Shown in pieces: positions 1,305-59,005 of a DNA stretch of 64,000 nt. The notes under the pieces were generated by a model. That model was given only the letters and a program-made list of their open reading frames with translations, did no database searches and was not told the DNA's origin. Source of the DNA: Haliotis cracherodii (taxonomy: Eukaryota); the NCBI RefSeq assembly GCF_022045235.1, contig NW_027266319.1, positions 12,090,001 to 12,154,000 of the forward strand, given 5' to 3'. The position numbers and the translations under genes were made by a program. How positions within the stretch are numbered: position 1 is the stretch's first letter; the number at the start of each line of letters is the position of its first letter.

Positions 1305-2510
1305 ATGTTTGACTTGCACAGATGTGTCCTTATCCTTCTTCTCTGTCACCTGACAATTGGCTCTGTTTCTTACAAAGAGAAAGATTTTCTGGACAATCTC
1401 ACCTTGAACTATGACCCCAAGATCCGTCCCGTGTTAGATGGTTCCAATACGATGGTGGGTATCACAATGGGATTGTCCACAATTTTATCTCTGGATGAAA
1501 AACAGGAAGTGCTCAGCTTTAAAGCATGGGTTTTAATGACATGGAAGGACCAACTTTTGGTGTGGAACATGACAGATGGCATTCCCGATACAGTGGCTAT
1601 ACCCTTGGTTGATGTATGGTCACCAACCATTATGAATCTTAACTCTGTGACAAACTTGAGGTATTTGAAAGATAATACGGATACTGTGCTTGTCTTTCGG
1701 GATGGAACAGTTATGTATTCCTACACAGGTAGGTTTGACATTGGATGCAAGGTGAATATCCAACAGTTTCCTTTTGATCCTCAGTCATGTACTTTTCACT
1801 TGCAAACATTCTATGCCCCTGTAACTAAGGAATATCTTCAAGTACAAGACAAGCATTTAAATCTAGAAACATATAAGGAAAGCGGAGAATTTCACCTTCT
1901 CAGTGCATCAATGGCACTACGGGAATACAAGACTCTCGGTGTGAGCAGTGACTGGATTGAAGTGACCTTAGTCCTGCAGAGACGAACTATGTTCTACATC
2001 CTAAACAACATCCTGCCTGTTGTGTTCCTGTCCTTTCTCAACACCTTCGCCTTCCTGTTGCCCGAGGAGAGCGGAGAGAAGATATCCTTGTGTGTCTCCA
2101 TCCTGTTGTCATATGCCATGTTCCTCACCCTCATCAACTCCTACCTACCAGCAAACTCCGACCACCTGTGTTTCTTTAGTGTCTATGTCACCCTGCTCGT
2201 GTTAATCAGTACGCTCACGTGCCTTGTCACAATCTTCATGTTCGTACTTAACACTCGTCTTCAAAGGGGCAAAGTTTGTCCAAGATGGCTGCCACTAGCT
2301 TGGGGATCAGACAGCAAAGTTGGGACCACTGAACCACGGGTTGAGATTGAAGACGTGGCTCCAAACCAATCAGATGATAAGGAGAAAGCAAACAAGACGA
2401 CAGACATGAAGGATTTGATAATGACCAGGTGTAACAAGGTAGCATTTGGGACTTTCTTCACACTCACAATTCTCATTAACCTGATATATTTCATCAGCGT
2501 ATCTCTATGA
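1305..2510 (+). CDS. Atypical nAChR-like Cys-loop ligand-gated ion channel subunit, subtype A (copy A1), single exon
   Basis: Uninterrupted ORF; the track starts at TTG 1224 and the first ATG is 1305. It has a signal peptide MFDLHRCVLILLLCHLTIGS, NYDPKIRPV, WKDQLLVW, Cys-loop CKVNIQQFPFDPQSC (C-x13-C), pre-M1 RR, LPEESGEK+M2, M3 and a C-terminal M4. No loop-C Cys-Cys. Confidence 0.93.
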   Translation: MFDLHRCVLILLLCHLTIGSVSYKEKDFLDNLTLNYDPKIRPVLDGSNTMVGITMGLSTILSLDEKQEVLSFKAWVLMTWKDQLLVWNMTDGIPDTVAIPLVDVWSPTIMNLNSVTNLRYLKDNTDTVLVFRDGTVMYSYTGRFDIGCKVNIQQFPFDPQSCTFHLQTFYAPVTKEYLQVQDKHLNLETYKESGEFHLLSASMALREYKTLGVSSDWIEVTLVLQRRTMFYILNNILPVVFLSFLNTFAFLLPEESGEKISLCVSILLSYAMFLTLINSYLPANSDHLCFFSVYVTLLVLISTLTCLVTIFMFVLNTRLQRGKVCPRWLPLAWGSDSKVGTTEPRVEIEDVAPNQSDDKEKANKTTDMKDLIMTRCNKVAFGTFFTLTILINLIYFISVSL

Positions 2511-5767: not shown

Positions 5768-7290
5768 TGTTCTCTTCATGTTTCAAATTTCTCTGCAATG
5801 TTTATTTATGTTATTGCTGTTACCAAAATACCAATTTCTGTTTTTCATGCACCCAGTTTCTTTTCCTTTTTTTGGTTTGCACACTTACCATTGTCAAATG
5901 TATGGTAATCCTACACATAATTGTATGACATTTAAATAAGGATACTTTACAACTGTGTATTACAGTACTTAAACGCGGAAAGTAACAAGTGAAGGCACAT
6001 CGCTATTTGGTGTTAAAATGCCCACTGAAGAAAGGCTCAAACGGTAAGTGGCACATTAACAAGAGAAAGCAAAGAAATGTCGTCATCTCGACTTTTTCAA
6101 GAGGTATGTCGTCCGCAACCCTGTACATTTACATGTTTGAAATCGTTTTAGGGGTGGACCATTTGATTTCTAGGGGGAGGGGGGACACGCAGTCCATAAT
6201 TCTGGGTAAATAAACAACTCAGCCTTCATCTGCTTGAGAAACAAATCTCATCCTTAATAAAAAAAGACCGCATTAAGGCCATCCTCATCTATACAGAGTT
6301 TTCATGAGCGAAGCCACAATCGTAGACTGTATGCCCGTAGCGCTTATTTCTTGTTACTAAAAAATAGTATCAATGTTAAGCAAGATGACCCGGTATAGAA
6401 GTGATCAAGTCGTTTTAAGATGTTATATAGTAGTAATTGGATGGTAATTTGCCTGAACTTCGGTATTACCCTCATACTTCGGTCCTGATGACTTGGGATG
6501 AGCGAGAGGTACAATGTCAGTACCCGAGGGACCTTGGATCTTAATTTACCGTAGTTCCTTCAGCAATCACAAAGGATGTTCTTCGTTTAACAGCTTTTAT
6601 TCTCTTTGTGTTGCCGGTCAACCCACTCTATTTGTCACTCAATCAAGAGACTCCGGCCGCAAGGCTTCAGTCCCAGTCAAAATGCTGGTGGCTTAAGATT
6701 GTTTCCGAGTACGACTTTAGTGACTGTCAGACAAGAGTGGGCGCACACCAGAACCCCGACTTGGGGCCTGACATTCCCCTAAAACCCGGTTCCTACATCA
6801 CAAGAGTTCTCATTGGTCTGCAACCAGAACCCCTTCAACAGACCATTCCAACCTACCCGCAGTTCTTTACCAGAATCCTTATTAGGTCTTTCGTAAGACG
6901 AACACCAATTTCCAGGAATCTGAACTCTCTTCCCTAATACCATATATTTTTTTATCTGTTGGTTGGTCTCTTATTATTATTCCTCTATTTCTGGTAGCGC
7001 GGATGTTATTTCTAACCTTATTACCTTGCCATGATACCTGATAGAACCCCTTGCTCTCGTGGCGTAGTGCTGCTCTCACCTTGAAGGGCTGTATATCTAC
7101 TCAAGGATGGTACCTACTCAAGAATGTTGCCAATGCTTGTCATGATATCTGGTATACATTCCCTCTTATTTCTATGACATACTGTTATAATTTCCTCTTA
7201 ATTATCCAAATACATATTACAATTAATGACTTAATGATTTAACTTCCCTTTAATTATCTAACTGCCTATTTTAATTTCAGGTCTATATTA

Positions 7291-7494
7291 CTTGTCATAT
7301 GAGGCGACTAACGGGATCGGGTGGTCAGGCTCGCTGACATGGTTGATGCATGTTATCCTTTCCCCATTGAGTGGATTGATGCTCATGATGTCAATCACTG
7401 GATTGTCTGGTCCAGACACGATATTTTACAAACTGTCGTCAAATAGCTGGAATATTGCCGAGTGCGGTGTTAAACAACAAATAACCAACCAACC
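7291..7494 (+). mobile_element. SINE-like family 1, 5'-truncated (also 29,478, 36,663 and 45,762)
   Basis: ggcgactaacgggatcgggtggtcagg ... gctggaatattgccgagtgcggtgttaaacaac. Confidence 0.8.
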
Positions 7495-8592
7495 TTCATC
7501 GCCAATCAGAGTTAGCAGCGCTGTTTGCGGTCCATTGTCAGGTTGCCAGATGCTCTTGCTTGAATTTCTTCCATGCAATCATACCATCCACACTGAAATC
7601 CATCGCTTTCGGAGCCAGTATATTCTGCATTTTAATCATTTAGCAACCCTTTAACTTCTAACATCATGAATTATTTCCTGTGAATACTGACAAGTCAACT
7701 TGAGCCGTTTCATTTTATTCTACCGGAGGTTCATTACACTAGACTTGGAGTAAATGTTCTCTGCTATTTTATCGGTCATAAATGAATGTTATTTTTTGAC
7801 TATGCAAACGTTACTGTGGCACTTGTGTTGTTCAGTAGTTGTAGCATCTAAATGGCATGTGAAAATGGAGTGCTCTTTTCGCTACTCGGGGTCTCCCTTT
7901 TTCAAAGGAAGTACCCTGCCATTGTGATAACCTGCAGAAAACACAAATGCAAGAAATCAATTTCAGGTGTCCAATGTTGTGTCTTGGCTGGTATATGGCT
8001 AAAAACGGCGTAAATCCAATACCCTCAATTACACTGTACGATTCCTGTAATGAACGGGACAAACTGAAAACATTGGACATTCTCCATGTGTTATAACGTA
8101 ATCAGTACATCTCAAAGATGTGATGCTGATGACGTTGTATCCTACAAATAACATTATGGTAAGCCATAATATTTCAGAACATTCTTTATATGAGTAGTTT
8201 TGAAAGATTTAACTTTATTACTGGATAACATCAAAATCAGACGTTAGTATACGTGTACGTCATCCACTCAAGGACAACATTCAATGCTCTACTGAATGTG
8301 CGTCATTTAATGTTATGGTTATAATACTATGTCAAAACACTGACTTGATAATTACAATTACAGTAATGTGGGGACGCAACATAACATTGACAAAGCTATT
8401 TCAGTTGTGATGGAGAACACCAAGTCAGTTAATGACTAATTGATCCTCGCTTTGGCACGTTTCTCCTGGATACGAACAATACCTATATAACGTCATGAAT
8501 CATTGCTAATCTTCAGTATCTGCGTGTGGCCGTTTTCATTGCGGTTGTGCTGTTTCTTGCAAAACATTAACCACGGTGATATAGTTTACGAA

Positions 8593-9813
8593 ATGATGTT
8601 TGATTTCTGCAGATGTTTCTTTATCCTTCTTCTCTGTCACCTGACAATTGGCTCTGTTTCATATAAAGAGAAAGAATTCCTGGCCAATCTCACCTTGAAC
8701 TATGACCCCAAGATCCGCCCCGTATTAGATGGTTCCAAGACGATTGTGTATGTCAGTTTGGGATTGTCCACAATATTATCTCTGGATGAAAAACAGGAAG
8801 TGCTCAGTTTTAAAGCATGGGTTATAATGGTCTGGCAGGACCAGCTTTTGGTGTGGGACATGACAGACGGCATTCCCGATACAGTGGCTATGCCCTTGGT
8901 GGATGTATGGTCACCAACCATAATGAATCTTGACTCTGTGACAGACCTGAGGTATCTTTATGATGAAACGGATTCTGTGCTTGTCAATAAGGATGGTACA
9001 GTTATATATTCCTACACAGGTAGGTTTGACATAGGATGCAAGGTGAATATACAACAGTTTCCTTTCGATCGTCAGTCATGCACTTTTCACTTGCAAACAT
9101 TCTATGCCCCTGTAACTAAGGAATATCTTCAGGTAGCAAACACGTATTTAAATCTGGAAAAATACAACCAAAACGGAGAATTTCACCTTCTCAGTGCATC
9201 AATAGCGTTGCAGAAATTCAAGATTTACAATGCCAGTAATGAATGGATAGAAGTGACCCTGGTCCTACAGAGACGACCTATGTTCTACATCCTCAACAAT
9301 ATCCTGCCCGTTGTGTTCCTGTCCTTTCTCAACACCTTTGCCTTCCTGCTGCCCGAGGAAAGTGGTGAGAAGATGTCCCTGTGTGTCTCCATCCTGTTGT
9401 CATATGCCATGTTCCTCACACTCATCAACTCCTACCTACCAGCAAACTCCGACCACCTGTGTTTCTTCAGTGTCTATGTCACCCTGCTCGTGTTAATCAG
9501 CACGCTCACGTGCCTTGTCACAATCTTCATGCTGATATTACACACTCATCTTCAAAGGGGCATGGCTAGTCCAAGATGGCTGCCAATTGCTTGGGGATCA
9601 GACAGCAAAGTTGGGACGACTGAACCACGGGTTAAGAATGACGATGTAGCTCCATACCAATCAGATGTGAAAGACAAAGACAAAGACAAAGCAAACAAGA
9701 AGTTAGACATGAAGGATGCGATAATCACCAAATGTAACAAGGTGGCATTTGGAACGTTCTTCACACTCACAATTCTTGTTAATCTGATATTTTTCATCTG
9801 CGTCTCTCTTTGA
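8593..9813 (+). CDS. Atypical nAChR-like Cys-loop subunit, subtype B (copy B1), single exon
   Basis: Same architecture; Cys-loop CKVNIQQFPFDRQSC; loop C IALQKFKIYNASNEW. The track starts at TTG 8503 and the first in-frame ATG is 8593. Confidence 0.93.
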   Translation: MMFDFCRCFFILLLCHLTIGSVSYKEKEFLANLTLNYDPKIRPVLDGSKTIVYVSLGLSTILSLDEKQEVLSFKAWVIMVWQDQLLVWDMTDGIPDTVAMPLVDVWSPTIMNLDSVTDLRYLYDETDSVLVNKDGTVIYSYTGRFDIGCKVNIQQFPFDRQSCTFHLQTFYAPVTKEYLQVANTYLNLEKYNQNGEFHLLSASIALQKFKIYNASNEWIEVTLVLQRRPMFYILNNILPVVFLSFLNTFAFLLPEESGEKMSLCVSILLSYAMFLTLINSYLPANSDHLCFFSVYVTLLVLISTLTCLVTIFMLILHTHLQRGMASPRWLPIAWGSDSKVGTTEPRVKNDDVAPYQSDVKDKDKDKANKKLDMKDAIITKCNKVAFGTFFTLTILVNLIFFICVSL

Positions 9814-12825: not shown

Positions 12826-14370
12826 TACTCACACGCAAAAGAAACGCAAGTCAAGTATGCAGTATACATGTTATTTATTTTCAACAGTAAAGACAAGAAA
12901 TACTATGAGGGCAAGATTGACAAAAATTTGACTGAAGACAGTTTAATGGATTAAAAGACAGATGACATAATTGGGTTTTTTCAAATGTTAAGGGCTTACA
13001 CAGTTTCGGGTCAATACCCAAAACGTCAGTAAAAACATGGTGTGACCACCATTAGCATTGATCACTGCCACACATCTCCTGTACATTGAGTGGATCAGAC
13101 GATTTGTGAAGGCCCTAGGGATCCTCCTGCACACATCCAGAGCAGCTGTGCGTAGTTCATCGGCAGTTGTAGGGACTGGGCGCATATTGTGCAGATGCCT
13201 TTGAACCTCATCCCAAAAGTGTTCCATGGGGTTCAGATGAGGGCTGAGGGCTGGTCACAGTAGGACACGGATGTTGTGTTTTTGCAGAAAGGTCATGGTA
13301 GCTCTGGCAAAATGGGGACGAGCGTTGTCCTGCTGGAAAATGTGTTGTTGATGTTGTGCAAAAAGTGGAACAACGTGGGGTCTGATCACTTGGTCGATAT
13401 ACCGCTGAGCAGTGACGCCGTGTCCCCGACCTTGACCAACATTCAGAAGTCACATGGGTCCAAGTCTCGCATTAAGTCTAATTCCTGCCCATATCATGAC
13501 GCTAGGTCCACCCCATTTATCCCTTTCCACAACGTTTCTCTCAGGGAAACGATCACCTCAACGCCGCCAAATTCTGACTCTTCCGTCTGCATGGGAGACA
13601 CAAAAGCGATTTTCATCAGAGAAAATGACACGCCTCCACTCACGATGACGCCAATTGTGATGACCCTGTGCCCACTGAAGTCGTGCTTGTCGATGCCGTG
13701 GTTGGAGAACAGGACGACGTGCTGGTCGGCGACATCTGAGGTTGTTGGAACGGATACGTCGGATCACAGTGTCCCGGCTAATGTGTCGATTATGTGTTCC
13801 TATGGTCTGTCGAGCACTTTCACTTGCAGCTAGGAACGGATGACGCTGGTGTTGACGGGTAATCTGCCGATCATGTCGAGGTGTGGTGACCCTAGGACGA
13901 CCGCTCCGAGGAAGGTCATCTGTGGTCTGTGTAGCATTGTATCGATGCAGGAGACGGTAAATTGTGGGTATGTTAACGTTGAAATGACGGGCAACATCTT
14001 CGACAGACTCTCCAGCTTCCAAACGTCCGATAGCCTGGTTTTTCTGAATTTGAGTAAGGCGTGGCATTGTTGACCAAGGAGTGGTTGGTCCAAGAATCGG
14101 CAACAGTTCTATACCCAATACAGTTCGTGACAGTTCGTGCATTTCCGATTTCGCGAGAAATGGGTGCATGATACCCACATATTCATTGAAATGGTGCGTT
14201 TTGGAGATTCGTTTTTTATGTTGCGTTTTTACTCGGGGCTTCCAAAATGCAACCAAAAATATTGATAACACCATCAGGCTTCACTACATGCTAAAACTCG
14301 TATCAATTTATGGTTCCGTGTTTGTTACCTATTAGCTTAAAGCAACTTGCGTTTCTTTTGCGTGTGAGTA
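12826..14370 (-). mobile_element. Tc1/mariner transposon, family B, with both TIRs; transposase disrupted
   Basis: Perfect 26-bp TIRs (tactcacacgcaaaagaaacgcaagt / acttgcgtttcttttgcgtgtgagta) flanked by TA. MPRLTQIQKNQAIG HTH, RSGRPR, VIFSDENRF, QQDNARPH and EHFWD motifs; stop after IWRR. Confidence 0.93.
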
Positions 14371-19916: not shown

Positions 19917-21122
19917 ATGTTTGACTTGCACAGATGTGTCCTTATCCTTCTTCTCTGTCACCTGACAATTGGCTCTGTTTCTTACAAAGAGAAAGATTTT
20001 CTGGACAATCTCACCTTGAACTATGACCCCAAGATCCGTCCCGTGTTAGATGGTTCCAATACGATGGTGGGTATCACAATGGGATTGTCCACAATTTTAT
20101 CTCTGGATGAAAAACAGGAAGTGCTCAGCTTTAAAGCATGGGTTTTAATGACATGGAAGGACCAACTTTTGGTGTGGAACATGACAGATGGCATTCCCGA
20201 TACAGTGGCTATACCCTTGGTTGATGTATGGTCACCAACCATTATGAATCTTAACTCTGTGACAAACTTGAGGTATTTGAAAGATAATACGGATACTGTG
20301 CTTGTCTTTCGGGATGGAACAGTTATGTATTCCTACACAGGTAGGTTTGACATTGGATGCAAGGTGAATATCCAACAGTTTCCTTTTGATCCTCAGTCAT
20401 GTACTTTTCACTTGCAAACATTCTATGCCCCTGTAACTAAGGAATATCTTCAAGTACAAGACAGGCATTTAAATCTAGAAACATATAAGGAAAGCGGAGA
20501 ATTTCACCTTCTCAGTGCATCAATGGCACTACGGGAATACAAGACTCTCGGTGTGAGCAGTGACTGGATTGAAGTGACCTTAGTCCTGCAGAGACGAACT
20601 ATGTTCTACATCCTAAACAACATCCTGCCTGTTGTGTTCCTGTCTTTTCTCAACACCTTTGCCTTCCTGTTGCCCGAGGAGAGCGGAGAGAAGATATCCT
20701 TGTGTGTCTCCATCCTGTTGTCATATGCCATGTTCCTCACCCTCATCAACTCCTACCTACCAGCAAACTCCGACCACCTGTGTTTCTTTAGTGTCTATGT
20801 CACCCTGCTCGTGTTAATCAGTACGCTCACGTGCCTTGTCACAATCTTCATGTTCGTACTTAACACTCGTCTTCAAAGGGGCAAAGTTTGTCCAAGATGG
20901 CTGCCACTAGCTTGGGGATCAGACAGCAAAGTTGGGACCACTGAACCACGGGTTGAGATTGAAGGCGTGGCTCCAAACCAATCAGATGATAAGGAGAAAG
21001 CAAACAAGACGACAGACATGAAGGATTTGATAATGACCAGGTGTAACAAGGTAGCATTTGGGACTTTCTTCACACTCACAATTCTCATTAACCTGATATA
21101 TTTCATCAGCGTATCTCTATGA
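19917..21122 (+). CDS. Atypical nAChR-like Cys-loop subunit, subtype A (copy A2)
   Basis: Near-identical to A1 (offset 18,612 bp); intact ORF; FPFDPQ variant. Track start is TTG 19836. Confidence 0.93.
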   Translation: MFDLHRCVLILLLCHLTIGSVSYKEKDFLDNLTLNYDPKIRPVLDGSNTMVGITMGLSTILSLDEKQEVLSFKAWVLMTWKDQLLVWNMTDGIPDTVAIPLVDVWSPTIMNLNSVTNLRYLKDNTDTVLVFRDGTVMYSYTGRFDIGCKVNIQQFPFDPQSCTFHLQTFYAPVTKEYLQVQDRHLNLETYKESGEFHLLSASMALREYKTLGVSSDWIEVTLVLQRRTMFYILNNILPVVFLSFLNTFAFLLPEESGEKISLCVSILLSYAMFLTLINSYLPANSDHLCFFSVYVTLLVLISTLTCLVTIFMFVLNTRLQRGKVCPRWLPLAWGSDSKVGTTEPRVEIEGVAPNQSDDKEKANKTTDMKDLIMTRCNKVAFGTFFTLTILINLIYFISVSL

Positions 21123-24731: not shown

Positions 24732-25937
24732 ATGTTTGACTTGCACAGATGTGTCCTTATCCTTCTTCTCTGTCACCTGACAATTGGCTCTGTTTCTTAC
24801 AAAGAGAAAGATTTTCTGGACAATCTCACCTTGAACTATGACCCCAAGATCCGTCCCGTGTTAGATGGTTCCAATACGACGGTGGGTATCACAATGGGAT
24901 TGTCCACAATTTTATCTCTGGATGAAAAACAGGAAGTGCTCAGCTTTAAAGCATGGGTTTTAATGACATGGAAGGACCAACTTTTGGTGTGGAACATGAC
25001 AGATGGCATTCCCGATACAGTGGCTATACCCTTGGTTGATGTATGGTCACCAACCATTATGAATCTTAACTCTGTGACAAACTTGAGGTATTTGAAAGAT
25101 AATACGGATACTGTGCTTGTCTTTCGGGATGGAACAGTTATGTATTCCTACACAGGTAGGTTTGACATTGGATGCAAGGTGAATATCCAACAGTTTCCTT
25201 TTGATCGTCAGTCATGTACTTTTCACTTGCAAACATTCTATGCCCCTGTAACTAAGGAATATCTTCAAGTACAAGACAAGCATTTAAATCTAGAAACATA
25301 TAAGGAAAGCGGAGAATTTCACCTTCTCAGTGCATCAATGGCACTACGGGAATACAAGACTCTCGGTGTGAGCAGTGACTGGATTGAAGTGACCTTAGTC
25401 CTGAAGAGACGAACTATGTTCTACATCCTCAACAACATCCTGCCTCTTGTGTTCCTTTCCTTTCTCAACACATTCGCCTCCCTGTTGCCCGAGGAGAGCG
25501 GAGAGAAGATATCCATGTGTGTCTCCATCCTGTTGTCATATGCCATGTTCCTCACCCTCATCAACTCCTACCTACCAGCGAACTCCGACCACCTGTGTTT
25601 CTTTAGTGTCTATGTCACCCTGCTCGTGTTAATCAGTACGCTCACGTGCCTTGTCACAATCTTCATGTTCGTACTTCACACTCGTCTTCAAAGGGGCAAA
25701 GTTTGTCCAAGATGGCTGCCACTAGCTTGGGGATCAGACAGCAAAGTTGGGACCACTGAACCACGGGTTGAGATTGAAGGCGTGGCTCCAAACCAATCAG
25801 ATGTTAAGGAGAAAGCAAACAAGACGACAGACATGAAGGATTTGATAATGACCAGGTGTAACAAGGCAGCATTTGGGACGTTCTTCACACTCACAATTCT
25901 CATTAACCTGATATATTTCATCAGCGTATCTCTATGA
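24732..25937 (+). CDS. Atypical nAChR-like Cys-loop subunit, subtype A (copy A3)
   Basis: Intact A-type ORF with several private substitutions (NTTVG, LPLV, FAS, ISM) and FPFDRQ. Track start is TTG 24651. Confidence 0.93.
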   Translation: MFDLHRCVLILLLCHLTIGSVSYKEKDFLDNLTLNYDPKIRPVLDGSNTTVGITMGLSTILSLDEKQEVLSFKAWVLMTWKDQLLVWNMTDGIPDTVAIPLVDVWSPTIMNLNSVTNLRYLKDNTDTVLVFRDGTVMYSYTGRFDIGCKVNIQQFPFDRQSCTFHLQTFYAPVTKEYLQVQDKHLNLETYKESGEFHLLSASMALREYKTLGVSSDWIEVTLVLKRRTMFYILNNILPLVFLSFLNTFASLLPEESGEKISMCVSILLSYAMFLTLINSYLPANSDHLCFFSVYVTLLVLISTLTCLVTIFMFVLHTRLQRGKVCPRWLPLAWGSDSKVGTTEPRVEIEGVAPNQSDVKEKANKTTDMKDLIMTRCNKAAFGTFFTLTILINLIYFISVSL

Positions 25938-30713: not shown

Positions 30714-31919
30714 ATGTTTGATTTCTGCAGATGTTTCTTTATCCTTCTTCTCTGTCACCTGACAATTGGCTCTGTTTCTTACAAAGAGAAGGAATTCCTG
30801 GCCAATCTCACCTTGAACTATGACCCCAAGATCCGCCCCGTATTAGATGGTTCCAACACGATTGTGTATGTCAGTTTGGGATTGTCCACAATATTATCTC
30901 TGGATGAAAAACAGGAAGTGCTCAGTTTTAAAGCATGGGTTATAATGGTCTGGCAGGACCAACTTTTGGTGTGGAACATGACAGACGGCATTCCTGATAC
31001 AGTGGCTATGCCCTTGGTGGATGTATGGTCACCTACCATAATGAATCTTGACTCTGTGACAGACCTGAGGTATCTTTATGATGAAACGGATTCTGTGCTT
31101 GTCAATAACGATGGTACAGTTATATATTCCTACACAGGTAGGTTTGACATAGGATGCAAGGTGAATATACAACAGTTTCCTTTCGATCGTCAGTCATGTA
31201 CTTTTCACTTGCAAACATTCTATGCCCCTGTAACTAAGGAATATCTTCAGGTAGCAAACACGTATTTAAATCTGGAAAAATACAACCAAAACGGAGAATT
31301 TCACCTTCTCAGTTCATCAATAGCATTGCAGAAATTCAAGATTTACAATGCCAGTAATGAATGGATAGAAGTGACCTTAGTCCTGAAGAGACGAACTATG
31401 TTCTACATCCTCAACAACATCCTGCCCGTTGTGTTCCTGTCCTTTCTCAACACCTTCGTCTTCCTGTTGCCCGAGGAAAGTGGTGAGAAGATGTCCCTGT
31501 GTGTCTCCATTCTGTTGTCATATACCATGTTCCTCACCCTAATCAACTCCTACTTACCAGCGAACTCCGACCACCTGTGTTTCTTCAGTGTCTATGTCAC
31601 ACTGCTTGTGTTGATCAGCACGCTCACGTGCCTCGTAACAATCTTCATGTTCGTACTTCACACTCGTCTTCAAAGGGGCAAAGTTTGTCCAAGATGGCTG
31701 CCACGAGCTTGGGGATCAGACAGCAAAGTTTGGACAACTGAACCACGGGTTGAGATTGAAGGCGTGGCTCCAAACCAATCAGATGATAAGGAGAAAGCAA
31801 ACAAGACGACAGACATGAAGGATTTGATAATGACCAGGTGTAACAAGGTAGCATTTGGGACTTTCTTCACACTCACAATTCTCATTAACCTGATATATTT
31901 CATCAGCGTATCTCTATGA
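30714..31919 (+). CDS. Chimeric nAChR-like subunit: B-type extracellular domain with A-type intracellular loop and M4
   Basis: B residues through GEKMSL, then A residues from FMFVLHTRLQRGKVCPRW to YFISVSL. B-type upstream flank and A-type downstream flank. Track start is TTG 30624. Confidence 0.92.
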   Translation: MFDFCRCFFILLLCHLTIGSVSYKEKEFLANLTLNYDPKIRPVLDGSNTIVYVSLGLSTILSLDEKQEVLSFKAWVIMVWQDQLLVWNMTDGIPDTVAMPLVDVWSPTIMNLDSVTDLRYLYDETDSVLVNNDGTVIYSYTGRFDIGCKVNIQQFPFDRQSCTFHLQTFYAPVTKEYLQVANTYLNLEKYNQNGEFHLLSSSIALQKFKIYNASNEWIEVTLVLKRRTMFYILNNILPVVFLSFLNTFVFLLPEESGEKMSLCVSILLSYTMFLTLINSYLPANSDHLCFFSVYVTLLVLISTLTCLVTIFMFVLHTRLQRGKVCPRWLPRAWGSDSKVWTTEPRVEIEGVAPNQSDDKEKANKTTDMKDLIMTRCNKVAFGTFFTLTILINLIYFISVSL

Positions 31920-55060: not shown

Positions 55061-57311
55061 TGTATACAATTTTGCAGAAAATACAAACCTCATAAAGACC
55101 CTGATTTGGTTTTAGAAAGCACTCCTATTAAAGGTGTAAAAGAGGTTCTTGGGTATTATTGTTTATCTCCATTTAACCTTTTTACCACACATAAAACATT
55201 TGAAAAATAAATGCCTGAAGGCACTTGACCTTCTGAAAGTCGTTTCAAGTTCAAAGTGTACAGGGCACTCACTTATACGCTCTAAACTGGATTATGGCTT
55301 CATCATCTATGGGGGACTCTGTAAAAGTAATTTAAAAGTATTAGATAGTATTCATCAGGCTTTGCCTCGGAGCCTTCAGAACATTCCCTCTTAATAGCCT
55401 GTATGTGGAAGCTGATGACCCATCGCTAAAAACAACGTTGCATTAAATCATCTTTACAGTATATTTCTAAACTGCATTCTGATCATTCTAATCCAGCCTA
55501 CGAATGTGTTTTTAATCCTCCATATAAAGAACAAAAATACATCTCTTACTTCACCCCTAGGAATCAGAATACAATCTCATATTTCTGCTTCTCAAATTAA
55601 TCTTGAAAATATAGCCCCAGCCAAACTCCTGTCTTCACCACCATGGCAGTTGGTAAAGCCAGTAGTGGATACAACATTAATTAAACTAAAGAAATCTGAT
55701 ACAAATCAACTAATTTATCAACAACAATACAATGAATTACGAAGCACATATGATGCTTACAAATCTATATTTACAGATGGATCCAAGGATGGTGACGCAG
55801 TTGCCAGTGCCACCTTCATTGGATCCAGGACTATTTCGTCAAGACTACCGGATAATTGTTCCATTTTTACAGCTGAATCACATACTTTATCAACAACACT
55901 AGAGTACATTTGTAAACAATCGAAACATAAACAATTTATTATAGTTTCAGATTCTTTATCCTGTCTTCAGACAATACAAAATCAGTCTTGCAAACATCCA
56001 CTTTTAATCGAAATCCTTGAATTATATAATGATCTTGCTACTGGCCAATACGACATCGTCTTTCGTTGGTTACCCAGCCATGTTGGAGTCATTGGTAACA
56101 CAATGATCGATGCGTCTGCAAAAGCACCTCTTTACACATCCGTGACACCACTTTTAATTCCATACAGTGATTATAAACCTGTGATCAGATGCTACATCCG
56201 AGATCTTATGCAACAGAAATGGGACACCCAAGTAGGTATCAACAAATTACATGAAATTAAACCAAATATCGGTTACACCTACTTGGGTTGTCAGTCCAGA
56301 CTTGAAGAGGTAATTTTACGACTATGTCGTATTGGCTATAGTAGATATACTCACGAATATTTATTGAAAGGTGCAGATCGTCCATTTTGTATCCCTTGTG
56401 ATGAGAGAAAATCACGGTCAAGCATGTCCTGCTTGACTGTATTGATTTTGCCATCACAAGGGATAACTATTTCACATCATCATCTCTCAAAGATCTTTTT
56501 AATAATATTACTTCTCTTTTAATTATTGGGTTTTTAAAAGAAATAGAATTGTATAATAATTTTTGATAATGTCTTGTATAAAATAAATGATCTTTTAAAA
56601 TTGGTAGAATGAATTTATATCTGAGTTTGTTACTGACTGTATCCTCAAAAGGGGGTTGACGTAGTGAAAAATAATTGTCCCCCTGAGAGGATATCGTAAG
56701 TCCATGTCATTCAAAGAATATTTCTGCTTATTACTCCTTTAAACGTAGAATATTTGTAATTTTATTTGTTGCTAACTTTGCGTACAATCGCCAGGTGCTG
56801 AACGAATGATGTAAATCCTGCTGGGTTCCATGCAGGTTGCAAAGGTACTGTAAGTCCCCATGGTCCCCCCGACCCGTGAAGATCCGGGGTAGAATAGGTC
56901 TTCAGCAACCCATGCTTGCCGTAAAAGGCGACTAACGGGATCGGGTGGTCAGGCTCGCTGACTTGGTTGATGCATGTTATCGATCCCAATTGCGTGGATC
57001 GATGTTCATGATGTAAATCACTGGATTGTCTGGTCCAGACTCGATTATTTACAGACCGCCGTCATATAGCTGGAATATTGCTGAGTGCGGCGTAAAACAA
57101 CAACCAAACCAAACCAAAACCCCATGGTCCTCAGAATGGTGGTCTACCTTCAGTTGCTGGCGATCTAGAGCCCGTTTTTATCTTGTATTGTAACGTATAG
57201 TGCCATCCTTTTTTTATGATTCCATACTAGTTTGATATCTTTTTCTGTGAGAAGTCTAGTTATTTTACTGTCATTTGTTGGCAGGTTTTTCAAATGTTCA
57301 CTCACTCACTC
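55061..57311 (+). mobile_element. Second copy of the 5'-truncated RNase H LINE
   Basis: Nearly identical to 17,178-19,428. The RNase H frame 55,506-56,522 is open (TAT instead of TAA). Confidence 0.85.
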
Positions 57312-57799: not shown

Positions 57800-59005
57800 A
57801 TGTTTGACTTGCACAGATGTGTCCTTATCCTTCTTCTCTGTCACCTGACAATTGGCTCTGTTTCTTACAAAGAGAAAGATTTTCTGGACAATCTCACCTT
57901 GAACTATGACCCCAAGATCCGTCCCGTGTTAGATGGTTCCAATACGATGGTGGGTATCACAATGGGATTGTCCACAATTTTATCTCTGGATGAAAAACAG
58001 GAAGTGCTCAGCTTTAAAGCATGGGTTTTAATGACATGGAAGGACCAACTTTTGGTGTGGAACATGACAGATGGCATTCCCGATACAGTGGCTATACCCT
58101 TGGTTGATGTATGGTCACCAACCATTATGAATCTTAACTCTGTGACAAACTTGAGGTATTTGAAAGATAATACGGATACTGTGCTTGTCTTTCGGGATGG
58201 AACAGTTATGTATTCCTACACAGGTAGATTTGACATTGGATGCAAGGTGAATATCCAACAGTTTCCTTTTGATCGTCAGTCATGTACTTTTCACTTGCAA
58301 ACATTCTATGCCCCTGTAACTAAGGAATATCTTCAAGTACAAGACAAGCATTTAAATCTAGAAACATATAAGGAAAGCGGAGAATTTCACCTTCTCAGTG
58401 CATCAATGGCACTACGGGAATACAAGACTCTCGGTGTGAGCAGTGACTGGATTGAAGTGACCTTAGTCCTGAAGAGACGAACTATGTTCTACATCCTAAA
58501 CAACATCCTGCCTGTTGTGTTCCTGTCCTTTCTCAACACCTTCGCCTTCCTGTTGCCCGAGGAGAGCGGAGAGAAGATATCCTTGTGTGTCTCCATCCTG
58601 TTGTCATATGCCATGTTCCTCACCCTCATCAACTCCTACCTACCAGCAAACTCCGACCACCTGTGTTTCTTTAGTGTCTATGTCAGCCTGCTCGTGTTAA
58701 TCAGTACGCTCACGTGCCTTGTCACAATCTTCATGTTCGTACTTAACACTCGTCTTCAAAGGGGCAAAGTTTGTCCAAGATGGCTGCCACTAGCTTGGGG
58801 ATCAGACAGCAAAGTTGGGACCACTGAACCACGGGTTGAGATTGAAGGCGTGGCTCCAAACCAATCAGATGATAAGGAGAAAGCAAACAAGACGACAGAC
58901 ATGAAGGATTTGATAATGACCAGGTGTAACAAGGTAGCATTTGGGACTTTCTTCACACTCACAATTCTCATTAACCTGATATATTTCATCAGCGTATCTC
59001 TATGA
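57800..59005 (+). CDS. Atypical nAChR-like Cys-loop subunit, subtype A (copy A4)
   Basis: Intact A-type ORF at offset 56,495 from A1; FPFDRQ. Track start is TTG 57719. Confidence 0.93.
   Translation: MFDLHRCVLILLLCHLTIGSVSYKEKDFLDNLTLNYDPKIRPVLDGSNTMVGITMGLSTILSLDEKQEVLSFKAWVLMTWKDQLLVWNMTDGIPDTVAIPLVDVWSPTIMNLNSVTNLRYLKDNTDTVLVFRDGTVMYSYTGRFDIGCKVNIQQFPFDRQSCTFHLQTFYAPVTKEYLQVQDKHLNLETYKESGEFHLLSASMALREYKTLGVSSDWIEVTLVLKRRTMFYILNNILPVVFLSFLNTFAFLLPEESGEKISLCVSILLSYAMFLTLINSYLPANSDHLCFFSVYVSLLVLISTLTCLVTIFMFVLNTRLQRGKVCPRWLPLAWGSDSKVGTTEPRVEIEGVAPNQSDDKEKANKTTDMKDLIMTRCNKVAFGTFFTLTILINLIYFISVSL

What the first reader, a model, noticed from the sequence alone, without database searches (positions are those of the whole stretch)
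8593..9813. Subtypes A and B diverge in the ligand-binding loops but share an almost identical pore domain
A manual count gives about 37 substitutions in the ~208-aa mature extracellular domain. They cluster in beta1 (MVGITM/IVYVSL), loop D (LMTWK/IMVWQ), the loop A-E region (KDNTDTVLVFR/YDETDSVLVNK), loop F (8 changes) and loop C (10 changes). The Cys-loop region is invariant between subtypes, and M1-M3 (~87 aa) has about one fixed difference (GEKI/GEKM). This fits diversified ligand specificity on a common channel and would allow combinatorial A/B heteropentamers.
Basis: partly seen in the sequence, partly recalled or inferred. Interest (0 to 1): 0.78.

Follow-up and report, generated by a model that had tools for sequence, protein, structure and literature searches.

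The report
Abalone receptor subtypes: variable loops, constant pore
Two versions of an intronless acetylcholine-receptor-like channel gene, repeated side by side in an abalone genome, differ almost only in the loops that would hold a ligand and in the cytoplasmic tail while keeping the same pore, a real but fairly ordinary pattern for this expanded mollusc gene family.

Summary
The window (an abalone, named Haliotis cracherodii by one source) carries 8 intact intronless Cys-loop receptor genes, 4 of type A and 4 of type B. A and B show exactly 37 fixed amino-acid differences in the 205-column mature extracellular domain and 1 in M1-M3. 34 of the 37 lie in binding-loop segments.

Synonymous divergence is the same in all domains (dS 0.30, 0.31, 0.33). 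So the shared A/B pore reflects purifying selection (dN/dS 0.06), not recent A-to-B copying.

Four corrections:
- The ICD-M4 tail is as diverged as the loops (18 fixed differences).
- Positive selection is not shown. Loop pN/pS is 0.72, and the M2a versus M1a test gives p=0.21.
- The cluster holds more types (C1-3, a pseudogene, O1/O2).
- Cluster-wide, the M1-M3 block has a mixed, conversion-type history. This scan had already noted that on adjacent DNA (s1-843341) and in another cluster (s1-831980).

The acetylcholine pocket is dismantled in both types. No RNA evidence was found. Ligand specificity and A/B heteromers remain untested. Verdict: a new member of a known kind.

The parts
8593..9813 (+). 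B1: intronless Cys-loop receptor gene, subtype B (406 aa), the finding's gene
   Evidence: Single ORF. Pfam LBD + TM domains. Best solved relatives are human alpha7 nAChR chains, E=5e-43. AlphaFold model pLDDT 80.7 with nAChR fold, TM-score about 0.8.
8593..8661 (+). B1 residues 1-23: hydrophobic N-terminus, presumed signal peptide
   Evidence: Inferred from the sequence and the model helix 4-19. No signal-peptide predictor was run. 4 fixed A/B differences.
8662..9276 (+). B1 residues 24-228: extracellular domain; 37 fixed A/B differences
   Evidence: A vs B dS 0.303, dN 0.108, dN/dS 0.36.
8731..8766 (+). beta1 strand segment (res 47-58): IVYVSL in B, MVGITM in A; 5 fixed differences
   Evidence: Strand E50-65 in the model. 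NG86 dN/dS 1.97 on very few sites.
8812..8847 (+). Loop D / beta2 (res 74-85): W76 kept (alpha7 W55). Fixed differences at 78, 80 and 82, which match alpha7 Q57, S59 and T61.
   Evidence: Alignment to 9viq_A..
8899..9018 (+). Loop A to loop E region (res 103-142): L113 at the alpha7 Y93 position. 8 fixed differences, including 132, 133 and 138 (alpha7 N111, S112, Q117).
   Evidence: Loop E dN/dS 1.67, loop A region 0.25.
9037..9123 (+). Cys-loop (C149-C163, C-x13-C) and loop B region (res 164-177): no fixed A/B difference. F170 sits at the alpha7 W149 position.
   Evidence: dN/dS 0.06 for residues 148-177.
9124..9180 (+). Loop F (res 178-196): 8 fixed differences
   Evidence: dN/dS 0.64.
9193..9252 (+). 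Loop C hairpin (res 201-220): 10 fixed differences and no vicinal Cys. Y212 (B) or L (A) sits at the alpha7 Y188 position, and W218 at Y195. An N-A-S sequon is present in B only.
   Evidence: Strands E197-211 and E214-227. dN/dS 0.37 with local dS 0.78.
9277..9531 (+). M1-M3 pore block (res 229-313): 1 fixed A/B difference (M/I at 261, the residue after GEK)
   Evidence: dS 0.313, dN 0.018. Helices 229-252, 258-281 and 291-321. Reticulate history.
9532..9810 (+). Short intracellular loop plus M4 (res 314-406): 18 fixed A/B differences when B2 is left out; (KD)n length variation
   Evidence: Low-confidence loop 334-362 and helix 359-405. A 12-base omission at 9670 is also seen in laid contigs.
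1305..2510 (+). A1: subtype A gene (401 aa)
19917..21122 (+). A2: subtype A gene
24732..25937 (+). A3: subtype A gene; carries several non-A variants in M1-M3
57800..59005 (+). A4: subtype A gene
30714..31919 (+). B2: in-frame chimera. It is B-like up to codon 303 and A-like from codon 314 on (31 of 31 diagnostic sites), followed by A-type 3' flank.
37956..39167 (+). B3: subtype B gene
46582..47784 (+). B4: subtype B gene
   Evidence: P0001.

Best explanation
A and B are two paralogous subtypes of a lineage-specific, intronless, tandemly amplified family of nAChR-like cation-channel subunits in an abalone.

Shown:
- Since the A/B split (dS about 0.3 in every domain), purifying selection has held three parts nearly constant (dN/dS 0.06-0.10): the pore block M1-M3, the Cys-loop/loop B coupling elements and the beta-sandwich scaffold.
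- The binding-site loops (beta1, D, A, E, F, C) changed at a near-neutral rate (pN/pS about 0.7). The ICD-M4 tail changed too (dN/dS 0.42).
- The units were then re-duplicated recently (94-99% identical blocks), and one unequal crossover at the end of M3 produced the chimera B2.
- M1-M3 is also exchanged among cluster members by gene conversion. This keeps the same pore module in paralogues whose extracellular domains are saturated with change.

Inferred:
- The subunits form cation-selective pentamers with a common pore (GEK ring, 9' Leu).
- Their inter-subunit pockets are hydrophobic, are not acetylcholine sites, and differ between A and B. The two subtypes therefore probably differ in what binds or modulates them.
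- The conserved scaffold would allow mixed pentamers.
For: Family and fold.

Counts and clustering.

Uniform dS but non-uniform dN:
- dS 0.303, 0.313, 0.329 for ECD, M1-M3, ICD-M4.
- dN 0.108, 0.018, 0.139.
- Chi2 for pS p=0.97; for pN p=2e-4.
- Same-amino-acid codon test p=0.71.

Loops versus scaffold:
- Fixed N:S is 43:16 in loops, 3:8 in scaffold and 2:6 in M1-M3.
- The scaffold and M1-M3 are far below neutral (p=4e-4 and 3e-3).

Later constraint:
- Within type B the ECD has dN/dS 0.10.
- For the whole ECD, fixed N:S is 46:24 against 7:18 within types, Fisher p=0.0019.

M1a fit: 66% of ECD codons at omega 0.07 and 34% at omega 1.

Lineage-specific: A+B+C are monophyletic (100/99) against H. 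rubra and H. asinina proteins. Both lineages changed: A keeps the outgroup-majority state at 18 sites, B at 11, and 8 are undecided.

Unit duplications and B2.

M1-M3 exchange:
- O1/O2 versus A/B/C four-fold sites at identical residues differ 0.61-0.70 in the ECD and 0.17-0.26 in M1-M3 (p from 2e-4 to 3e-8).
- Four-gamete failures are 36% (M1-M3), 13% (ECD) and 3.6% (ICD-M4). Whole-CDS PHI: 0 of 2000 permutations.
- Synonymous sites that are not fixed: 21 of 27 in M1-M3 versus 18 of 42 in the ECD, p=0.006.

Pocket: by alignment to alpha7, with residue roles taken from passages of PMC6384821:
- Y93 is L, W149 is F, Y188 is Y/F in B and L in A, Y195 is W.
- W55 is kept, Q57 is I (B) or L (A), Q117 is I (B) or M (A).
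- The CC pair is absent.

SGEK and LPxxSD are aligned and conserved.
Against: - No test shows adaptive divergence. Loop pN/pS of 0.72 does not differ from 1 (p=0.26). Inside the loops alone, fixed versus within-type N:S is 43:16 versus 4:5, p=0.12.
- The M2a versus M1a LRT is 3.16, p=0.21. Only two sites have posterior above 0.8 (B1 residues 132 and 212).
- The whole-ECD MK-like p=0.0019 is partly a pooling effect of loops with scaffold, and it uses paralogous copies, not alleles.
- My loop limits are partly post hoc.
- No transcript evidence. No RNA run holds the gene, and the four runs laid also cover intergenic DNA, so they look like DNA of relatives.
- Because M1-M3 has a reticulate history, the equality of A-B dS in M1-M3 and the ECD may be partly coincidental.
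- Assembly into pentamers, ion selectivity, ligand binding and heteromer formation are all inferred from homology.
Confidence: 0.7

Rival explanations
1. The shared pore is only a by-product of gene conversion of the TM region between A and B. The loops look divergent only because they escaped homogenisation.
For: - M1-M3 does show conversion-type signals in the cluster: low dS against O1/O2, 36% four-gamete failures, fewer fixed and more shared synonymous sites, and patchy shared variants.
- A second cluster on contig C16 shows the same pattern.
- Earlier scan notes s1-843341 and s1-831980 say the same.
Against: - A-B synonymous divergence in M1-M3 (0.313) equals that of the ECD (0.303) and ICD-M4 (0.329) (p=0.97; p=0.71). 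Conversion would erase synonymous differences too.
- About 15.5 synonymous against 3.4 nonsynonymous differences in M1-M3 requires purifying selection.
- M1-M3 is also nearly invariant in proteins of other Haliotis species, where conversion with these copies cannot act.
Confidence: 0.1
2. The loops differ because constraint on them is relaxed. The classical pocket is dead in these subunits (accessory or structural subunits, or gating by something other than an orthosteric ligand), so the A/B differences carry no functional specificity.
For: - Loop pN/pS of 0.72 is not different from neutral.
- M1a places 34% of ECD codons at omega = 1 and M2a is not significantly better.
- The aromatic cage and CC pair are lost in both types.
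- ICD-M4, which binds no ligand, diverged as much.
Against: - Within type B the ECD is constrained (dN/dS 0.10). Loop N:S within types is 4:5 against 43:16 fixed.
- The same positions change again and again in C types and in other species (table: sites 132, 212, 216).
- All 8 window copies and 3 upstream copies keep open frames, whereas a true pseudogene next door has stops.
Confidence: 0.2
3. The array is a recently amplified, unexpressed or decaying block, and the pattern has no present function.
For: - No RNA holder was found.
- Units are 94-99% identical over kilobases and lie among transposon fragments.
- Public gene models at the locus are chimeric or skip the ECD.
Against: - Strong purifying selection acts on the scaffold and pore since the A/B split. 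It also acts among B copies (dN/dS 0.10 over the whole CDS).
- 11 of 12 A/B/C/D-type copies are intact.
- An absent RNA holder is not evidence of silence, as itself states.
Confidence: 0.07

Closest known systems
Lineage-specific intronless, tandem nAChR-gene expansions of molluscs (Jiao et al. 2019, PMC6896357; abstract and passages read)
   Same: - Intronless single-ORF genes in a head-to-tail array.
- Paralogues cluster by lineage.
- LBD + TM domain architecture.
- At least 102 family matches in this genome, stated by the tool as a lower bound.
   Different: - That paper treats bivalves above all. 'Haliotis', 'gene conversion' and 'positive selection' each occur 0 times in its main text.
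- The domain-resolved dN/dS picture, the A/B subtype contrast and the reticulate M1-M3 block are not described there.
- Its supplements were not seen.
Cephalopod chemotactile receptors (CRs). I know these only through passages of PMC11526382, PMC10338036 and PMC13174522. The primary papers were not held.
   Same: - nAChR-derived and intronless, in tandem clusters.
- Acetylcholine signature residues lost.
- Homo- and heteropentameric cation channels.
- Ligand-pocket residues are the variable part.
   Different: - The CR and CR-like clades are described as predominantly cephalopod.
- No chain named as a chemotactile receptor is among the 60 listed of 157 sequence matches or among the listed Foldseek matches.
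- Diversifying selection is reported for CRs but is not significant here.
- No sensory expression or ligand is known for the abalone genes.
Alpo4, orphan nAChR-like receptor of the annelid Alvinella (PMC10338036; passages)
   Same: Lophotrochozoan nAChR-like subunit without the loop C CC pair; no response to acetylcholine; hydrophobic orthosteric pocket; unknown agonist.
   Different: Alpo4 keeps the key aromatic residues, according to that paper. The abalone A/B proteins replace Y93 and W149, and in A also Y188. Alpo4 is an isolated gene, not an array of subtypes.
Human alpha7 nAChR (closest solved structures, e.g. 9viq_A)
   Same: - Fold (TM-score 0.72-0.81 to nAChR chains).
- Cys-loop C-x13-C, the FPFD motif and the pre-M1 Arg.
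- SGEK cation-type intermediate ring, 9' Leu and the post-M3 PxW motif.
   Different: - About 26% identity.
- 5 of the 7 named pocket residues are replaced in B and 6 of 7 in A.
- No CC pair, a short intracellular loop, and no introns.

Membership tests
Pentameric ligand-gated ion channel (Cys-loop receptor) superfamily | Neur_chan_LBD followed by the Neur_chan_memb domain | tested here: met
   B1: 118.7 and 49.9 bits. A1: 122.4 and 49.6 bits. All are above the gathering cut-offs of 26 and 28.1.
Pentameric ligand-gated ion channel (Cys-loop receptor) superfamily | Cys-loop: two Cys separated by 13 residues, with the FPFD motif | tested here: met
   C149 and C163 with F156, P157 and D159 are invariant in a 24-sequence alignment. 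They align to alpha7 C128 and C142.
Pentameric ligand-gated ion channel (Cys-loop receptor) superfamily | Beta-sandwich ECD plus four transmembrane helices | tested here: met
   AlphaFold model with helices 229-252, 258-281, 291-321 and 359-405. Foldseek E=2e-30 and TM-score about 0.8 to nAChR chains.
Cation-selective nAChR/5-HT3 branch | Glu at -1' (the GEK motif) before M2, and 9' Leu | tested here: met
   Query 'pEEsGEKmsLcvsiLLs' aligns to alpha7 'pADSGEKISLGITVLLS'. The prime numbering and the link to cation selectivity are recalled knowledge.
Acetylcholine-binding alpha-type nAChR subunit | Vicinal Cys pair at the tip of loop C | tested here: not met
   A-S (B) or V-S (A) sits at the alpha7 C190-C191 positions.
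Acetylcholine-binding alpha-type nAChR subunit | Aromatic cage Y93, W149, Y188, Y195 (principal side) and W55 (complementary side). Residue roles come from PMC6384821 passages. | tested here: not met
   L113, F170, Y212 (B; F in B3) or L (A), and W218. Only W76 (the W55 position) is kept.
Mollusc intronless tandem nAChR expansion (Jiao 2019) | Intronless genes in tandem arrays, with paralogues grouping by lineage | tested here: met
   Single ORFs. 8 copies on one strand in 64 kb plus 6 more nearby. A+B+C clade at 100/99 support.
Cephalopod chemotactile receptor (CR) clade | Phylogenetic placement inside the CR or CR-like clade | not tested
   No CR sequence was at hand. MolluscaGenes passages call those clades predominantly cephalopod. 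No CR-named chain appears among the listed PDB matches.
Cephalopod chemotactile receptor (CR) clade | Expressed in sensory epithelium and gated by poorly soluble molecules, not by acetylcholine | not testable with these tools
   No RNA holder.

The most novel reading that the evidence does not exclude
Abalones have evolved, independently of cephalopods, a CR-like family of ionotropic chemoreceptors built on a 'constant pore, variable sensor' plan.
- Gene conversion and purifying selection keep one interchangeable M1-M3 pore cassette across the cluster.
- The hydrophobic inter-subunit pockets (beta1 and loops D, E, F and C) and the cytoplasmic tail diversify into subtypes such as A and B.
- Because the pore is shared, any mixture of subtypes can co-assemble. 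This would give combinatorial pockets at A/B and B/A interfaces.
Probability: 0.25. Interest if true: 0.65.

Novelty: new member of a known kind. Interest (0 to 1): 0.42.

Why it matters
If A and B really differ in what opens them, this array would be a compact natural experiment. It offers two binding-site designs on one identical pore, plus a natural B/A tail chimera (B2). That makes it suited to mapping which loops set specificity in the orphan nAChR-like receptors that dominate mollusc genomes.

It would also extend the octopus 'neurotransmitter receptor turned chemoreceptor' story to gastropods.

As it stands, the analysis mainly gives a clean domain-by-domain selection profile. It also shows that the shared pore needs purifying selection as well as gene conversion, not conversion alone.

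Tried and rejected
- Cross-species DNA.
- A-type orthologues. A second protein search with A1 found no full-length A-type orthologue in H. rufescens. Public models of this locus are partly chimeric, so that absence means little.
- Expression. No RNA holder was found. The one read-laying run showed contigs that also cover intergenic DNA. It therefore gives neither expression nor a test of the ECD-skipping splice seen in public models. Of 322 joints only 15 were listed, none at that place.
- Positive selection. My own codon-model code gave a non-significant M2a versus M1a test. Pairwise loop dN/dS above 1 (beta1 1.97, loop E 1.67) rests on fewer than 10 changes each, and I do not count it as evidence.
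- PHI within single domains was not significant (ECD p=0.054, M1-M3 p=0.12, ICD-M4 p=0.10). Only the whole CDS was (0 of 2000 permutations).
- Synonymous constraint as the cause of low M1-M3 dS against O1/O2. I rejected it because A-B synonymous change in M1-M3 is as high as in the ECD.
- Assembly or haplotype artefact as the source of A versus B. I rejected it because both types alternate on one contig with different flanks.
- Literature. One search found 0 papers. One search listed 7 and one search listed 12 of 13; judged from titles and abstract starts only, none is about this family. The primary octopus papers were not held. No supplementary file was asked for. Supplements of PMC6896357 and PMC13174522 might list abalone sequences or clades that bear on novelty.
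Full report
WHAT IS THERE. The window is G000:C56:12090001-12154000 of a 1.18-Gb assembly. One source names a 100%-identical protein fragment as Haliotis cracherodii (P0002).

It holds eight head-to-tail, single-ORF genes of 400-406 codons on the + strand. Each matches Pfam Neur_chan_LBD plus Neur_chan_memb (for A1 and B1). The best solved relatives are human alpha7 nAChR chains (E=5e-43). An AlphaFold model of B1 (pLDDT 80.7) superposes on nAChR subunits with a TM-score of about 0.8.

Four copies are type A and four are type B (coordinates under parts).

The array goes on outside the window:
- three intact upstream copies (C1-C3, 89-91% identical to B1);
- a downstream copy broken by stops;
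- two much older paralogues (O1 and O2, 52-55%).

The genome has at least 102 matches to this protein (a lower bound).

THE OBSERVATION. An alignment of the eight proteins and a count of positions where no A residue equals any B residue give these results:
- 37 fixed differences in 205 ECD columns;
- 1 in 85 M1-M3 columns;
- 4 in the signal peptide;
- 18 in 93 ICD-M4 columns if the chimeric copy B2 is left out, and 0 if it is kept.

The 37 are clustered. 0 of 10,000 random placements reach the observed adjacency or bin variance. 34 of 37 fall in six loop segments that cover 103 of 205 columns. I set those limits after seeing the data.

By alignment to alpha7 and the model's strands, the segments are beta1, beta2/loop D, loop A, loop E, loop F and the loop C hairpin. 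Cys-loop and loop B carry no fixed difference, although A1 and A2 have P for R just after FPFD.

CONVERSION OR SELECTION? Nei-Gojobori estimates for A versus B (B2 excluded) are:

| Region | dS | dN | dN/dS |
|---|---|---|---|
| ECD | 0.303 | 0.108 | 0.36 |
| M1-M3 | 0.313 | 0.018 | 0.06 |
| ICD-M4 | 0.329 | 0.139 | 0.42 |

- pS is homogeneous over the three regions (p=0.97) and pN is not (p=2e-4).
- At codons coding the same residue, A1 and B1 differ in 27/156 (ECD) and 12/82 (M1-M3), p=0.71.
- A 20-codon sliding window shows no synonymous trough over the TM block.

The A/B pore identity is therefore not a product of recent A-to-B homogenisation. It needs purifying selection.

Splitting the ECD gives fixed N:S of 43:16 in the loops (pN/pS 0.72), 3:8 in the scaffold (0.10) and 2:6 in M1-M3 (0.10). 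So the scaffold is as constrained as the pore, and the loops run near the neutral rate.

IS IT ADAPTIVE? Not shown.
- The loop ratio does not differ from neutral (p=0.26).
- For the whole ECD, fixed N:S (46:24) exceeds within-type N:S (7:18), p=0.0019. Inside the loops alone the contrast is 43:16 versus 4:5, p=0.12. The test also uses paralogous copies, not alleles.
- I wrote an M0/M1a/M2a codon likelihood and ran it on the ECD of the 11 A/B/C copies. M0 omega is 0.41. M1a puts 66% of codons at 0.07 and 34% at 1. M2a adds 7% at omega 2.5, but the LRT is 3.16 (p=0.21).
- The two sites with posterior above 0.8 are B1 residues 132 and 212. These are the alpha7 N111 (loop E) and Y188 (loop C) positions.
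- For maintained difference rather than drift: type B copies are constrained among themselves (ECD dN/dS 0.10). The same sites vary again in C types and other species.
- Both lineages changed. A keeps the outgroup-majority state at 18 sites, B at 11, and 8 are undecided.

THE WIDER PORE STORY. Against O1 and O2, the A/B/C genes are saturated at synonymous sites in the ECD. They are very diverged in ICD-M4 (dS above 1.1), but dS is only 0.24-0.64 in M1-M3.

At four-fold sites of identical residues, the difference is 0.61-0.70 in the ECD against 0.17-0.26 in M1-M3 (Fisher p from 2e-4 to 3e-8). Synonymous constraint cannot explain this, because A-B M1-M3 changes as fast as the ECD.

M1-M3 also has these features:
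- the most four-gamete failures (36%, against 13% and 3.6%);
- mostly non-fixed synonymous variation (21 of 27, against 18 of 42 in the ECD, p=0.006);
- distances that disagree with the ECD tree, for example C1/C2 nearer to A in M1-M3 but nearer to B in the ECD.

PHI on the whole CDS rejects no-recombination (0 of 2000 permutations). The per-domain PHI tests are not significant.

A second cluster on contig C16 shows the same contrast, and a third on C23 does not reach that depth of divergence.

I found this before reading the scan's notes. Note s1-843341 (same cluster, adjacent DNA) and s1-831980 (another cluster) had already reported it.

For the present finding, the lesson is that the 'common channel' is a cluster-wide module. 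It is kept by conversion plus selection, and A versus B is one instance where selection alone is demonstrable.

STRUCTURE OF THE ARRAY.
- A-B homology is limited to the CDS plus about 250 bp upstream and 37 bp downstream.
- Larger A units and B units were duplicated recently, giving blocks of 1.4-9 kb at 94-99% identity.
- B2 is B-like up to codon 303 and A-like at all 31 diagnostic sites from codon 314. It continues into A-type flank. That pattern fits an unequal crossover at the end of M3, as note s1-838747 also says.

WHAT THE PROTEINS PROBABLY DO.
- By alignment the coupling and pore elements are canonical: FPFD, pre-M1 Arg, SGEK, 9' Leu, LPxxSD and a post-M3 PRW motif.
- The single fixed M1-M3 difference is the residue right after GEK. 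By recalled knowledge of M2 geometry, it does not line the pore.
- Passages of PMC6384821 name seven alpha7 pocket residues: Y93, W149, Y188 and Y195; W55, Q57 and Q117. B has L, F, Y (F in B3) and W; W, I and I. A has L, F, L and W; W, L and M. There is no CC pair.
- So neither type has an acetylcholine cage (agreeing with note s1-838718). Both pockets are hydrophobic, and they differ at 3 of 7 pocket positions.
- B also has an N-A-S sequon at the loop C tip that A lacks.
- This resembles what review passages report for octopus chemotactile receptors and for Alpo4. Clade membership was not tested and is unlikely given.
- Function, ligand and heteromer formation are inference.

NOVELTY.
- Intronless tandem nAChR expansions in molluscs are published (PMC6896357, abstract and passages).
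- Clades with altered binding residues are noted in PMC13174522 (passages).
- I found nothing in print on abalone clusters or on TM-block conversion in this family. One search found 0 papers. Searches gave listings only, with none relevant. 'Gene conversion' and 'positive selection' each occur 0 times in PMC6896357.
- Supplements were not seen.

The finding is a well-documented new member of a known kind.

Noticed in passing
window 30714-31919: B2 is an intact in-frame B/A hybrid gene. Its ECD and M1-M3 are B-type. From codon 314 on, the ICD-M4 and the 3' flank are A-type. It is a natural domain-swap control for any functional test.
   Followed up: yes
window about 8746-9195 (B1); proteins P0002, P0003, P0008, P0011, P0013, P0015: Public gene models in four Haliotis species skip most of the ECD. 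They join just after the 'DGSxT' start of beta1 to a point before loop F or loop C. Two models also fuse neighbouring genes. In B1 the skipped stretch starts with GTATGT and ends with CTTCTCAG, and the frame is kept; the acceptor is the same in all 8 copies. This could be a real exitron or an annotation artefact; it is undecided.
   Followed up: partly
window 7134-7634: An extremely high-copy repeat lies upstream of B1. The summed contig depth is in the hundreds of thousands to millions in all four runs laid, with many internal joints. It is probably a SINE-like element.
   Followed up: no
window 13561-14274 (-) and 55506-56522 (+): Transposon remnants lie between the receptor genes. One ORF has Tc3-type transposase HTH domains (1.4e-13). 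Another has an RNase H domain (9.7e-7).
   Followed up: partly
window 1779-1781 and 20391-20393: A1 and A2 carry Pro instead of Arg directly after the FPFD motif of the Cys-loop. This position is variable in the family (Val in alpha7).
   Followed up: no
window 9640-9690 (B1) and the same place in B3 and B4: The Lys-Asp repeat in the intracellular loop varies in length between B copies (KDKDKDK, KDKDK, KDK). A 12-base omission at 9670 and a 3-base omission at 8593 (the extra start-side Met codon of B1) also appear in contigs of other runs.
   Followed up: partly
G000:C56:12157746-12158946 (L012/L015), just past the window's end: A further family member of its own ECD type is broken by stop codons (one search lists 2 TGA, 1 TAA and 1 TAG across its two matches). 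H. rufescens protein P0008 looks like its orthologue.
   Followed up: partly
G000:C16:4.59-4.66 Mb (L017, L019, L020, L029, L030): Another receptor cluster shows the same contrast: ECD synonymous sites are saturated while M1-M3 dS is 0.27-0.41. The shared-pore-block pattern is therefore not special to this array.
   Followed up: partly
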